A stretch of DNA of 64,000 nucleotides from Haliotis rubra (lineage: Eukaryota), in NCBI RefSeq assembly GCF_003918875.1, contig NW_025765403.1:1426001-1490000 (forward strand). Direction: 5' to 3'. Made by a program: the position numbers and the translations under genes. The notes under the pieces are model-generated. The model saw nothing but the letters and a program-made list of their open reading frames with translations. It had not been told where the DNA came from and ran no database searches. Of this stretch, positions 32,684 to 35,600 are shown in pieces. The number at the start of each line of letters is the position of its first letter. Within the stretch, counting starts at the first letter, position 1.

Positions 32684-35600
32684 ATGTCCACGTGTGATGT
32701 GGAAGAATCGGTTTGTGAAGTCAGTGATGCTTCCCATATCATGGTTGGACCAAAGAACACTCTCAATCACAGCCCATGTTCCATTGATGTGGACTGTGTT
32801 GCTGAGTCACCAGATGATTGCTCTGAATCTTCAGTGAATCCGTTGCTGGGTGAAAGCGCATCTTCCAAAGACACAGAGTGTATTGACATGATAGACAAGG
32901 TTCAGAACGACACTGAAATAATTATTGACGGTGCATGTTCCACACAGGAGAGCCACGCGCCCGCAGAGAGCTTGGATTTGGGAAGTGAGGCGTCTACCTG
33001 CGGGCTTGATGATGAGGATGAAGATGAGGATGATCAAGCTCAGGAGACTTCTAATGGAGGCAACCTTTCCGTGACCATGGTTGGACCGTCAAATACCCTT
33101 AATGTCATGCTACCTCACGTCAAAATCAGAAACGTCTGCATGAAAGGGAATACAAAAGTCAACATTAAGTACAACATTACTTCAGAACCCTCAACTGAAT
33201 GTGAGTACATTTCAGTCTTATATAACAGTTTTCCCAAAAAAATAATGTAACATATCATTATTTATACTATGAACTATTGTTGATTTTATTAGTGCAAAAC
33301 TTCAAATGTTGACGTACTCATGATGAAATGAAATTACTATTCATGTGGCTAAAGGGAAACACCCAAAGAAAGCCCGAATAACAGTTTTAGATGTGTTACT
33401 TTCACCACGGCTTTCTTCGTCAAGCATCCAAAATATTCATGGTGGACACACGCTCACTCATGTAACATTTCGATTTTTCATTTCAGCGCACAAAGAAAAA
33501 CGGAAGCTCAGGATAACTATAGATATGGAAGGCGATTCGTCGGCAATGGATGCCGTGTTTGCCAATTATCATCGCCCTAGGACAAGACTCAAACAAAATC
33601 TAGACAACCTTTTTGATCGGTTAAACTACGCCATTGACTTGATAACACCAGGGTCCATTGTAATAGAGTTACGACCAACAACGAGTAATTCTATTCATAC
33701 ACTGCTGGAATCAATTGAGAATGGACAGTTTGATAATATAGTCAAGGAACTATTAAGCGAAGAGTCTGTCTTCAAGATGATTGCTGGTAAAGAGGTTACT
33801 GTTACTGTTGACTTGAGCATTCCAGAGGAGCTGATCCAGAAGGCTGGGACATATCTCACCGATCCCATTCCTGTAGATCAGACTTGTGGATTGTTAGATG
33901 TGACTGTGAGAGTGCGAGAGGAGGGCAACGAGGGCATCCAGAAGGCTGGGACATCTCTCACCGATCCCATTCCTGTAGATAAGACTTGTGGATTGTCAGA
34001 TGTGACTGTGAGAGTGCGAGAGGAGGGCAACGGGGACAACGACAACAGCAGTCAATCTTCATCGGTTGATCCTTCAGATCCACAAGAGGTTGAAGAAGAT
34101 CTATCCTCCAGTGTTGACCCAGTATCATCAGCAGGTAGAATGACTGACTTATGATCTTTTCAATATATGATATTCATTTTATGATGGTTAAACATGATCA
34201 CTTAAATCATAACGATTTAAGGGAAAAAAAATCTGACTCAGTCATGTAGTTGTTATGTGGCTCTCGCTTTCTTTCATCTGTTCACTTTAGTTATTTATCA
34301 ATTTAGATTCCCAGGGTGGTGCAGCCTTCAGTATGTCACGTTCAAGGTAAAAAATACACAAATTCGAAAGTTTTCCAGTCTAGATAGTCATGGTCTACAA
34401 GTAGAAAATATCAATACTAAACATGGAATGATTCTTTTTACATTGTAATAAAAGAAAATGCTGTTTGGAGCCACGTCTCTGCCGGAATTCAATATTAAAT
34501 TAACTAATTGCTCACTCCTGAATCTGATAATACATTACATGGGCCATGCATCTCAAATTTTGTGTTTCAGCCAAATACATGGTAGACCAGGAAGGCTGAC
34601 TCTTTCTTCACTAAAGGGATTGCAGGACTGTGATCCATCAGTAATAATAACACGCATCAATCAGGACGTAAGAGGTTTTAAAACTATTTTGTCTAGAAAG
34701 GACCTGACGCCCAACGACTTTAAGCTGATTGTGTCTGTCCTGAGTAAAGCAGTTCATTGTGAATCAATGCCAGAGTGGATCAATGTCATTCTCAGTACAG
34801 TTGTTATTACCCCATTCTTTCGGACATCTTACACAAATGTTCTGTCACATCTGGACACTAATGATTCAAGACAAGTGACTTTGGAGAGTTTTCCAATCTT
34901 CAGAGAGATTTTGAAACGGATGCCATCTGAGGGATGGCCTGTTCTGAACACTGTTGCTCTGCTATCACGTGGCTTGATGGTAAGAAATGCCATAAAAGAT
35001 GTTGATGTCATTAAATGCGCAGAGGAATTGGATGAGCTTCTGCGGATAACTAAACCAGAAACACCTGAAATGAATGTGTCGACTGGCAGGCAGGACATGG
35101 ATGAGGATGAAGAGCTTGGAACACCACCAGAAAGCTTCCGTGAACTTCCAGTGATTCCGAGGAAGGAGGAACTCGATGGAACTGAGGAGATCTTCCTTCT
35201 GCGCAATAAAGTTGGAACTAGATTCAAAGATCTGGAACACTATCTTGAATGCCAGTTCCGCCTCTTCAGAGCTGATGTCATTATGCCTCTTAAGAAAAAC
35301 ATTCAAGCATTCAAAAGGGCCGACGCAGATACTTTTACAGACTATAGGACATATGCCGATGTACACATTTTGCGTCCTGTCTGTTCACCCAATGGTCTTT
35401 GCCACAGGCTCGCTTTTTCTACCAGACATCTGCAAAGGGTCAAATGGGAATCAAGTCAAAGATTGATCTATGGCTCCCTACTGTGTTTGTCATTAGATAA
35501 ATTCACTGACGTTGTCCTTTTTGCAACTGTTGACAGTCGAGATCCTGAAAGTCTAAAACAGGGATTGGTTGATGTGAGGTTTCTGTCAGATTTACCATAT

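What the first reader, a model, noticed from the sequence alone, without database searches (positions are those of the whole stretch)
32735..33106. Two RHIM-like amyloid motifs at the N-terminus of a ZNFX1 helicase
Seen: the first coding exon of paralog 3 is acidic and disordered but contains HIMVGPKNTLN (32735-32767) and VTMVGPSNTLNV (33071-33106), followed by a beta-prone stretch VKIRNVCMKGNTKVNIKYNI. Known: the RHIM core of RIPK1, RIPK3, ZBP1 and TRIF is (I/V)Q(I/V/L)GxxNx(M/L), and Met for Gln is a variant I recall from invertebrate RHIM-like motifs. Inference: a functional analogue of ZBP1 (nucleic-acid sensor plus tandem RHIMs) built on a ZNFX1 chassis. I am not aware of this fusion being described.
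Basis: partly seen in the sequence, partly recalled or inferred. Interest (0 to 1): 0.87.

Follow-up and report, generated by a model that had tools for sequence, protein, structure and literature searches.

The report
RHIM-pattern motif pair on abalone ZNFX1
An abalone antiviral-type RNA helicase gene (ZNFX1 family) starts with an acidic, disordered tail holding two conserved copies of a short motif that fits the pattern of RHIM assembly motifs, but no profile test recognises them as RHIMs, so a ZBP1-like sensor is plausible and unproven.

Summary
Both peptides are at the stated coordinates in one ORF (32684-33250). That ORF is exon 1 of the third of four tandem ZNFX1 genes in a Haliotis (abalone) genome.

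- **Exon joining:** canonical GT-AG introns join exon 1 in frame to the helicase. RefSeq models of H. asinina, H. rufescens and H. cracherodii (2097-2118 aa) make the same joins.
- **Conservation:** all orthologues keep both motifs. S-x-x-M-[VFI]-G-x-x-N-T-[LI]-N is invariant at six positions, while the acidic linker diverges.
- **Fit to the RHIM pattern:** the motif fits apolar-x-apolar-G-x-x-N-x-apolar, and hhalign aligns it in register with RIPK3/RIPK1 (P=0.033).
- **Failed membership tests:** Gln of the tetrad is always Met. Pfam RHIM gives no hit. A profile of the motif finds no solved RHIM. A RIPK-derived HMM scores it no better than noise.
- **The "beta-prone stretch":** this is the first hairpin of a conserved alpha/beta domain encoded mostly by exon 2, not an amyloid extension.
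- **State of the gene here:** the window's copy has three one-base homopolymer frameshifts in the helicase exon, but no other sign of decay. I think assembly error is more likely than pseudogenisation.

Verdict: a real, conserved, lineage-restricted motif pair. The RHIM-like function is a reasonable hypothesis (about 0.4), not a finding.

The parts
32684..33200 (+). Coding exon 1 of ZNFX1 paralogue 3. Starts at ATG 32684, 172 codons plus 1 base (phase 1), followed by donor GTGAGT at 33201. Acidic, Ser/Thr-rich and predicted disordered up to about residue 134.
   Evidence: orthologue exon 1 covers aa 1-160 or 1-171; AF2 pLDDT<50 for residues 1-134
32732..32767 (+). Motif 1, S-H-I-M-V-G-P-K-N-T-L-N (residues 17-28). 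It is preceded by the conserved stretch E-S-V-C-E-V-S, which puts Cys and Val at -8 and -6 from the tetrad.
   Evidence: conserved in H. asinina, H. rufescens, H. cracherodii and a fourth Haliotis contig
32771..33067 (+). Acidic linker between the motifs (residues 30-128; 28 D+E, 2 K+R). It evolves fast and has indels between species.
33068..33106 (+). Motif 2, S-V-T-M-V-G-P-S-N-T-L-N-V (residues 129-141).
33119..33178 (+). It is modelled as a beta-hairpin that forms the start of the folded alpha/beta domain continued in exon 2.
   Evidence: AF2 of P0006:131-285: strands 5-11 and 15-26, block pLDDT 73-86; same hairpin in the longer model
33201..33486 (+). Intron 1 (GT...AG, phase 1).
   Evidence: same position in orthologue loci L002 and L003
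33487..34134 (+). Exon 2. It encodes a highly conserved alpha/beta domain with no family assignment, followed by a Ser/Asp-rich tail. It contains a window-specific 102-bp tandem duplication at 33834-34032.
   Evidence: no Pfam or PDB sequence match
34307..34346 (+). 40-nt micro-exon (AG/GT flanked), conserved with the H. asinina and H. rufescens models.
34571..39613 (+). Giant helicase exon holding the ZNFX1 domain, the SF1 helicase AAA_11/AAA_12 and the NFX1-type zinc fingers. In this window it is read in four frames because of one-base indels at about 35839 (G run, +1), about 36285 (A run, +1) and about 38734 (A run, -1), relative to both orthologues.
39875..40080 (+). Last coding exon (RZ-type zinc-finger region), ending at the stop codon.

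Best explanation
Within abalones (Haliotis), one member of a tandem cluster of ZNFX1 helicase genes has gained an N-terminal extension of about 340 residues. The extension holds two copies of a 12-residue motif, S-x-x-M-[VFI]-G-x-x-N-T-[LI]-N. The copies are separated by a roughly 100-residue acidic disordered linker and followed by a small conserved alpha/beta domain.

I think the two motifs most likely act as RHIM/cRHIM-type homotypic beta-strand assembly elements. When several helicase molecules load on one RNA, their N-termini are concentrated. The motif pairs could then stack into a cross-beta (possibly two-rung, HET-s or ZBP1-like) assembly that recruits or activates a downstream partner. 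The acidic linker would keep the monomer soluble.

Shown here: the sequence, the repeat, the splicing into ZNFX1, the conservation, the disorder and the pattern fit. Inferred: any self-assembly, any partner, and any link to RNA sensing or cell death.
For: - **Presence and repeat:** the motifs are present, and the repeat is beyond chance.
- **Gene structure:** exon 1 is joined in frame to the ZNFX1 body, and three RefSeq orthologue models make the same joins.
- **Conservation:** six positions are invariant in the seven aligned instances from four taxa, and the two H. cracherodii instances keep them. In the three-species alignment, 15 of 24 motif columns are invariant against 53 of 159 elsewhere in the exon (Fisher p=0.006). 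The rest of the exon evolves fast, with pN/pS 0.57-0.68.
- **Pattern fit:** the motif fits the published description of RHIM. That is an apolar-Q-apolar-G tetrad, then a conserved Asn, a variable residue and an apolar residue.
- **Register:** hhalign places A-S-H-I-M-V-G-P-K-N-T-L on C-S-G-V-Q-V-G-D-N-N-Y-L of RIPK3 in the expected register (12 columns, 42% identity, P=0.033).
- **Variation at tetrad positions 1-3:** functional arthropod cRHIMs keep only the fourth-position Gly (VHIG, LHFG, ARNG).
- **Context:** both motifs lie in a region predicted to be disordered. Invertebrate RHIMs are reported at the ends of innate-immune proteins, where CARD or death folds usually sit, often as 2-3 copies joined by long unfolded linkers.
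- **Specificity:** the pattern is absent from 118 other ZNFX1 proteins and from the rest of the window.
Against: - The Gln that defines the tetrad is Met in every instance, and one tetrad starts with Thr.
- Pfam RHIM gives no hit at E<=10 for the window or the H. asinina and H. rufescens orthologues.
- A profile of the seven instances retrieves no PDB chain at E<=10. A two-sequence RIPK profile retrieves all solved RHIMs and nothing else.
- An HMM from RIPK3 and RIPK1 does not place the abalone motifs among its 25 best hits in about 306,000 background residues.
- The hhalign probability is 1.5%.
- Motif 2 lacks the upstream aliphatic strand that deep mutagenesis finds essential for RIPK nucleation.
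- A Pro follows the Gly in the window's motifs.
- No partner with the same motif was found, and none could be searched for.
- The extension has no relatives outside Haliotis.
- The window's copy has three frameshifts.
Confidence: 0.4

Rival explanations
1. The two motifs are ordinary short linear docking motifs. They would form a bivalent binding site in a disordered tail for a folded domain of some partner (adaptor, E3 ligase or kinase), with no amyloid or cross-beta assembly. The resemblance to RHIM would then be a coincidence of a short pattern.
For: Every profile-based RHIM test fails. The invariant positions (S, M, G, N, T, N) include residues that RHIMs do not conserve (Met, Thr and the second Asn). 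Conserved islands in a fast-evolving acidic disordered region are typical of linear motifs.
Against: The conserved Gly, Asn and alternating apolar residues are what a beta-arch motif needs, and the hhalign register is the RHIM one. No known docking motif that I could name matches this sequence (my own knowledge, not tested).
Confidence: 0.3
2. Motif 2 is a peripheral strand of the adjacent alpha/beta domain, which begins five residues after it. Motif 1 is a duplicated copy that can replace it within the same molecule, giving an autoinhibitory or switch element rather than a signalling amyloid.
For: Motif 2 directly abuts the hairpin that starts the folded domain. There is a weak but repeated sub-threshold match of motif 2 plus hairpin to a PH-like beta-domain model (PH_30, E 0.009-0.03 in three orthologues).
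Against: AF2 gives motif 2 no secondary structure and pLDDT below 30 in the full N-terminal model. The PH_30 scores are far below the family cut-off (15 against 27 bits). The three matches come from orthologues, so they are not independent.
Confidence: 0.1
3. The motifs have no specific function. They are a recent internal duplication retained across a young genus. In this genome the whole gene is a dead copy.
For: The extension is an orphan restricted to Haliotis. Exon 1 as a whole is weakly constrained (pN/pS about 0.6). The window copy has three frameshifts that would truncate the protein before the helicase motifs.
Against: Synonymous divergence between H. asinina and H. rufescens is substantial (pS 0.43-0.49), yet the six motif positions are invariant in both copies in all species. 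Exon 4 of the window copy has pN/pS 0.285, which is no higher than between the intact orthologues (0.322), and it has no in-register stop. All frameshifts are single-base changes in homopolymer runs. A fourth one of the same kind sits in paralogue 2, which is the signature of consensus error.
Confidence: 0.15

Closest known systems
Canonical RHIM of RIPK1, RIPK3, ZBP1, TRIF and viral M45/ICP6 (Pfam PF12721)
   Same: Short motif in a disordered region of an innate-immune protein. Apolar-x-apolar-Gly core, followed at +3 by a conserved Asn and at +5 by an apolar residue. Ser two residues before the core, as in RIPK3 and mouse RIPK1. hhalign aligns it in that register.
   Different: Met replaces the defining Gln in all nine instances. 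The Gly before the core is absent. Motif 2 has no upstream aliphatic strand. No match to Pfam RHIM, none to solved RHIM chains, and no signal with a RIPK-derived HMM.
ZBP1/DAI (nucleic-acid sensor with tandem RHIMs)
   Same: The overall logic: a nucleic-acid-binding module joined to two assembly-type motifs that are separated by an unfolded linker (for ZBP1 and invertebrate tandem RHIMs).
   Different: The sensor module is an SF1 helicase with NFX1 and RZ zinc fingers, not Z-alpha domains. The motifs are N-terminal rather than C-terminal to the sensor. No RIPK3-like partner is known here. This is analogy only, not homology.
Arthropod cryptic RHIMs (PGRP-LC/LE, IMD, Pirk, shrimp SRB2, insect STING)
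   Same: Invertebrate immune proteins with divergent cores (VHIG, LHFG, ARNG), in which only the fourth-position Gly is fixed, that nevertheless form amyloid and signal. The abalone cores IMVG, VMFG and VMIG fall within that range.
   Different: cRHIMs were defined by experiment, and none is reported on a helicase or in molluscs. The abalone motif keeps the downstream Asn-x-apolar of vertebrate RHIMs.
HET-s prion-forming domain and NLR-associated amyloid signalling motifs of fungi and bacteria
   Same: Two similar but non-identical repeats joined by a flexible linker at the end of a sensor NTPase. This is the arrangement that gives a two-rung beta-solenoid in HET-s.
   Different: The linker here is about 100 residues and strongly acidic. 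No sequence relationship was tested.
Vertebrate ZNFX1 (dsRNA-sensing, interferon-induced helicase)
   Same: Same core architecture: ZNFX1 domain, AAA_11/AAA_12 helicase, NFX1-type zinc fingers and RZ finger, with 37-38% identity between abalone paralogue 4 and vertebrate ZNFX1.
   Different: Among the 118 other ZNFX1 proteins examined, none has this N-terminal extension or the motif.
RHIM-like sequences reported inside coronavirus Nsp13, also an SF1 helicase
   Same: A published claim of a RHIM-like tetrad associated with an SF1 helicase and RNA-dependent cell death.
   Different: There the tetrad lies inside a folded domain (1B) of a viral protein. Here the motifs are in a disordered host N-terminal tail.

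Membership tests
RHIM (canonical, Pfam PF12721) | Core tetrad (I/V)-Q-(I/V/L/C)-G | tested here: not met
   The observed cores are IMVG, TMVG, VMFG, VMVG, IMVG, VMFG, IMVG and VMIG. Position 2 is Met in all instances, and position 1 is Thr in the window's motif 2. Definition taken.
RHIM (canonical, Pfam PF12721) | Gly at tetrad position 4, then a conserved Asn, a variable residue and an apolar residue | tested here: met
   G-x-x-N-T-[LI] is invariant in all instances. The feature is as described.
RHIM (canonical, Pfam PF12721) | Significant match to the family profile | tested here: not met
   No PF12721 hit at E<=10 for the window exon, for short pieces around each motif, or for the N-termini of the H. 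asinina and H. rufescens orthologues.
RHIM (canonical, Pfam PF12721) | Reciprocal profile similarity to experimentally solved RHIMs | tested here: not met
   The abalone profile A2 against the PDB gives 0 hits at E<=10. As a control, a RIPK3 plus RIPK1 profile retrieves only RHIM chains, including M45 and mouse RIPK3. The RIPK HMM does not rank the abalone motifs in the top 25 of about 306,000 residues. hhalign gives P=0.033 in the correct register but a probability of 1.5%.
RHIM (canonical, Pfam PF12721) | Upstream beta-strand supplying two aliphatic residues at -8 and -6 (Y531/I533 in RIPK1, V450/I452 in RIPK3) | tested here: inconclusive
   Motif 1 has Cys(-8) and Val(-6) in the conserved S-V-C-E-V stretch. 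Motif 2 has polar or Gly residues there.
RHIM (canonical, Pfam PF12721) | Lies in an intrinsically disordered segment | tested here: met
   AF2 pLDDT is below 50 and no secondary structure is assigned for residues 1-134. The model is shallow (5 rows), so this is weak evidence. The composition is acidic and Ser/Thr-rich.
RHIM (canonical, Pfam PF12721) | Forms amyloid and mediates homotypic or heterotypic RHIM-RHIM binding | not testable with these tools
   Needs ThT, SDD-AGE, EM or cell assays.
RHIM (canonical, Pfam PF12721) | A partner protein with a matching motif exists in the same genome | not tested
   No abalone proteome could be scanned. The window and the two orthologue loci hold no further copy. 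HMMER against 1.84 billion representatives found only a Haliotis fragment.
Arthropod cRHIM | Apolar-x-x-Gly core with only the Gly strictly conserved; function shown by mutation | tested here: inconclusive
   The sequence criterion is met, but it is so loose that it carries little weight. The functional criterion cannot be tested here.
ZNFX1 helicase family | ZNFX1 domain plus SF1 helicase AAA_11/AAA_12 plus NFX1-type and RZ zinc fingers | tested here: met
   PF25396 3.6e-29, AAA_11 2e-13 and AAA_12 7e-40 on the window pieces. Orthologues carry PF20173 RZ. Identity to H. asinina XP_067659791.1 in the helicase exon is 77-91% at the protein level and 89% at the DNA level.
ZNFX1 helicase family | Uninterrupted reading frame in this genome | tested here: not met
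   Three one-base indels relative to both orthologues, at about 35839, 36285 and 38734. Whether they are real or assembly errors is unresolved.
ZBP1 | Z-alpha nucleic-acid-binding domains | tested here: not met
   Pfam found no Z-alpha domain in any piece. The comparison is functional analogy only.

The most novel reading that the evidence does not exclude
The motif pair is a genuine amyloid-forming signalling element with a Met-for-Gln tetrad. That would make this abalone ZNFX1 paralogue an independently evolved counterpart of ZBP1: an RNA-sensing helicase that signals through tandem RHIM-type motifs. It would be the first such element on a helicase and the first characterised in a mollusc. 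It would also imply an undiscovered downstream partner carrying the same motif.
Probability: 0.3. Interest if true: 0.8.

Novelty: new variant of a known kind. Interest (0 to 1): 0.5.

Why it matters
How invertebrate nucleic-acid sensors pass on their signal is largely unknown. Molluscs lack MAVS-style CARD signalling on ZNFX1, yet they have expanded the ZNFX1 family.

A ZNFX1 paralogue that gained tandem RHIM-type motifs would show that amyloid-type signalling has been attached to different sensor types more than once: Z-alpha in vertebrates, PGRP and SRB2 in arthropods, NLRs in fungi and bacteria. It would also widen the sequence definition of the RHIM core, with Met at position 2.

The idea is directly testable with a 135-residue peptide. 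Abalone are farmed and suffer from a herpesvirus, and mammalian herpesviruses use RHIM decoys, so a host RHIM-like sensor would be of practical interest.

If the motif is only a docking site, the finding is a modest lineage-specific addition to a known gene.

Tried and rejected
- **Pfam on exon 1, exon 2, the short motif pieces and the orthologue N-termini:** no RHIM, no TRADD-N, death, CARD or TIR. Only a sub-threshold PH_30 match.
- **PDB sequence searches with exon 1, exon 2 and the motif profile:** nothing.
- **HMMER of exon 1 against 1.84 billion representatives:** one hit only, a 151-aa Haliotis fragment.
- **Word-indexed searches with the N-terminal 340 residues, in full-length and stand-alone length ranges:** only the two known orthologues, or nothing.
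- **Exact look-ups of the window's own ORFs:** not on record, so there was no independent check of the frameshifts.
- **Foldseek of both AF2 models against the PDB:** only M16-peptidase/core-protein hits with TM 0.16-0.33 and rmsd above 11 Å. I regard these as uninformative, so the exon-2 domain stays unassigned.
- **My guess that exon 2 encodes a TRADD-N-like domain:** no support from any tool, and no TRADD-N plus ZNFX1 paper was found.
- **SUMO-interaction motif reading (V-V-M-V after an acidic run):** considered and set aside, because it does not explain the invariant G-x-x-N-T-x-N.
- **N-termini of paralogues 1, 2 and 4:** no Pfam domain, no motif and no similarity to the extension.
- **Degenerate-DNA scan of the viral or metagenome collections:** not run, because by my own rough estimate chance matches would have swamped any signal.
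- **Sun et al. 2025, on the origin of necroptosis in Mollusca:** not held in the library.
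Full report
**1. What is in the sequence**

ORF 32684-33250 (+) translates to a 188-residue peptide. It contains HIMVGPKNTLN at 32735-32767, VTMVGPSNTLNV at 33071-33106 and VKIRNVCMKGNTKVNIKYNI at 33119-33178, exactly as reported. The coding part of the exon (172 codons) has 35 Asp+Glu against 8 Lys+Arg and a pI of 4.05. The 99 residues between the motifs have 28 acidic and 2 basic residues.

The two motifs share S-x-x-M-V-G-P-x-N-T-L-N, that is 9 of 12 residues. None of 5000 shuffles of the exon reaches 9. 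Four of the nine shared codons differ only by synonymous changes. A relaxed RHIM pattern is found nowhere else in the six-frame translation of the 64-kb window.

**2. The gene**

The window holds four ZNFX1 paralogues in tandem on the + strand, with bodies at 8371-13284, 20047-25353, 34571-39613 and 51856-56970. Each has the Pfam ZNFX1 domain and the AAA_11/AAA_12 helicase. The organism is an abalone: paralogue 4 is 92% identical to a Haliotis asinina protein and 86% identical to a H. rufescens protein.

The finding's exon is followed by a GTGAGT donor at 33201, and an AG acceptor ends at 33486. The reading frame continues as ...T-E-S-H-K-E-K-R-K-L-R-I-T-I-D.

The full model in the window is:
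- exon 1, 32684-33200
- exon 2, 33487-34134
- a 40-nt micro-exon, 34307-34346
- a giant exon, 34571-39613
- a last exon, 39875-40080

All introns are GT-AG. Splicing exons 1-3 onto exon 4, up to the first frameshift, gives 824 codons with no stop. RefSeq-type models join the same exons in the same way: H. asinina (XP_067659791.1, 2097 aa), H. rufescens (XP_046375706.2, 2113 aa) and H. cracherodii (XP_071085948.1, 2118 aa). In H. asinina and H. rufescens I mapped the model onto genomic DNA. The refutation condition 'exon not joined to the helicase' is therefore not met, as far as gene models can show. I could not obtain direct transcript evidence.

**3. State of the copy in this window**

Relative to both orthologues, the giant exon has three one-base indels. 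There is a +1 in a G run at about 35839, a +1 in an A run at about 36285 and a -1 beside an A run at about 38734. As a result it is read in four frames, and as assembled it would terminate before the P-loop.

Read in the orthologues' codon register, it has no stop codon. Its pN/pS against H. asinina is 0.285, no higher than the 0.322 between the two intact orthologues. Paralogue 2 has a similar one-base change in a T run near 24950. I think homopolymer consensus errors are more likely than pseudogenisation, but the tools cannot decide this. The exact-sequence look-ups of the window's ORFs found nothing.

**4. Conservation of the motifs**

All orthologues keep both motifs:
- H. asinina: H-V-M-F-G-P-K-N-T-L-N and V-V-M-V-G-S-S-N-T-L-N
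- H. rufescens: L-I-M-V-G-T-M-N-T-I-N and V-V-M-F-G-N-S-N-T-L-N
- H. cracherodii: L-I-M-V-G-T-M-N-T-L-N and V-V-M-I-G-N-S-N-T-L-N
- a 740-bp contig of a further Haliotis assembly: motif 1 only, H-I-M-V-G-P-T-N-T-L-N

In the alignment of seven instances the invariant positions are S, M, G, N, T and N.

In the three-species alignment, 15 of 24 motif columns are invariant against 53 of 159 elsewhere in exon 1 (Fisher p=0.006). The rest of the exon evolves quickly (pN/pS 0.57-0.68) and has indels in the linker. Synonymous divergence between H. asinina and H. rufescens is 0.43-0.49, so the conservation is not simply a matter of recent ancestry.

**5. Distribution**

The roughly 340-residue extension (exons 1 and 2) is an orphan.
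- HMMER of exon 1 against 1.84 billion representatives found only the Haliotis fragment.
- Two word-indexed searches with the N-terminal 340 residues found only the orthologues, or nothing.
- None of 118 other ZNFX1 proteins, from molluscs to vertebrates, has the extension or the motif.
- The other three paralogues in the window lack it too.

**6. Is it a RHIM?**

The published definition is an 18-22-residue segment with a core (V/I)-Q-(V/I/L/C)-G. C-terminal of the core come a conserved Asn, a variable residue and an apolar residue. It sits in a disordered region.

In favour:
- The abalone motif has the apolar-x-apolar-Gly core, the Asn at +3 from the Gly and Leu or Ile at +5.
- A Ser lies two residues before the core, as in RIPK3 and mouse RIPK1, whose sequences the PDB search returned.
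- hhalign aligns the abalone profile with a RIPK3/RIPK1 profile in exactly this register (12 columns, 42% identity, P=0.033).
- Motif 1 is preceded by a conserved S-V-C-E-V. This places Cys and Val where RIPK1 and RIPK3 have the two upstream aliphatic residues that deep mutagenesis shows are essential.

Against:
- The Gln is Met in all nine instances.
- Motif 2 has no upstream aliphatic strand.
- Pfam RHIM gives no hit at E<=10 on any piece of the window, H. asinina or H. rufescens sequences.
- The abalone profile finds no PDB chain at E<=10. [quoted passage not shown]
- An HMM built from those two RHIMs does not place the abalone motifs among its 25 best hits in about 306,000 residues of ZNFX1 proteins and window ORFs.

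By profile criteria the motif is therefore not a member of the canonical family. It is a pattern-level look-alike.

The arthropod cRHIMs show that functional amyloid signalling motifs can diverge this far. Their cores are VHIG, LHFG and ARNG, and only the Gly is fixed. Failing the membership test therefore lowers the claim 'it is a RHIM' more than the claim 'it works like one'.

**7. The neighbouring domain**

AlphaFold2 on the N-terminal 345 residues of the H. asinina orthologue (a 5-row alignment, mean pLDDT 44.7) leaves residues 1-134 unstructured. It builds a hairpin at 136-156 followed by an alpha/beta domain.

A second model of residues 131-285 reaches pLDDT 67.8 and pTM 0.67. The hairpin is its most confident part, at pLDDT 73-86.

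The domain is much better conserved than exon 1, with 79% mean column identity. It has no Pfam or PDB sequence match and no convincing structural neighbour.

**8. Mechanism**

My preferred reading (about 0.4) is that the motif pair is a RHIM/cRHIM-type homotypic assembly element. The acidic linker keeps it apart and soluble in the resting protein. Helicase clustering on RNA brings the pairs together. The conserved alpha/beta domain next to it provides a further interaction surface. Only the anatomy is shown here, and the assembly is inferred.

The main rival (about 0.3) is a pair of ordinary linear docking motifs. Lesser rivals are a strand-swap or autoinhibitory element tied to the adjacent domain (about 0.1) and a functionless remnant (about 0.15).

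**9. Novelty**

The gene itself is already annotated in related species as 'NFX1-type zinc finger-containing protein 1-like'. I found no paper linking RHIM and ZNFX1, or ZNFX1 N-terminal motifs in abalone. Earlier work noted that invertebrate RHIMs occupy the positions of death-fold domains in diverse immune proteins, often as two or three copies on long unfolded linkers. A RHIM-type pair on a ZNFX1 helicase would therefore be a new variant of a known theme rather than a new kind of system.

Noticed in passing
window 35839, 36285, 38734 (paralogue 3) and about 24950 (paralogue 2): Four single-base length changes in homopolymer runs break the reading frames of two of the four ZNFX1 paralogues. 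The coding sequence shows no other sign of decay. This suggests assembly consensus errors in this region.
   Followed up: partly
window 33834-34032: An in-frame 102-bp tandem duplication (2 copies, 96% identical) in exon 2 repeats a 34-residue segment (I-Q-K-A-G-T...R-E-E-G-N). It is absent from the H. asinina and H. rufescens orthologues.
   Followed up: partly
L001:1-740 (GCA_002753775.1 contig PEAW01061914.1): A 740-bp contig from another Haliotis assembly consists of two copies of a roughly 370-bp unit. The unit comprises the upstream region, the 5'UTR and the first 40 codons of exon 1 (including motif 1), and then jumps back to the upstream sequence. It is either a real tandem duplication of the gene's 5' end or an assembly artefact.
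   Followed up: partly
window 32130-32380; copies near 27176-27410, 51340-51535, 62604-63160, 63719-63764: A dispersed repeat about 200-250 bp long (73-89% identity, both orientations) lies upstream of paralogue 3, and again just upstream of paralogue 4.
   Followed up: no
window 40136-43858: A block of satellites lies immediately downstream of paralogue 3: a 28-bp unit x 65 (40679-42466), a 52-bp or 199-bp unit (42676-43210) and a 120-bp unit x 3 (43498-43858). They account for the extreme negative GC skew at 40-44 kb.
   Followed up: no
window 30496-31061: The microsatellite-like array (ACATACACGCAG)n produces several overlapping spurious ORFs of 130-285 aa on both strands.
   Followed up: no
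   Followed up: no
window 8371-8790, 20047-21186; P0002:1-130: The N-terminal regions of paralogues 1, 2 and 4 are unrelated to each other and to the paralogue 3 extension, and have no Pfam match. The tandem ZNFX1 copies differ mainly at their N-termini.
   Followed up: partly
P0004 (H. rufescens, 2230 aa), C-terminal about 420 residues: By eye, in the printed sequence, a relative of paralogue 4 seems to carry a second NFX1-type zinc-finger/RZ-like module after the first. This would be another lineage-specific remodelling of the family.
   Followed up: no
window 32777-32797 (residues 32-38, C-S-I-D-V-D-C): A conserved x-[IVL]-D-V-[DE]-C stretch follows motif 1 in all orthologues. It loosely resembles a caspase-type acidic site, but I did not test this.
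   Followed up: no
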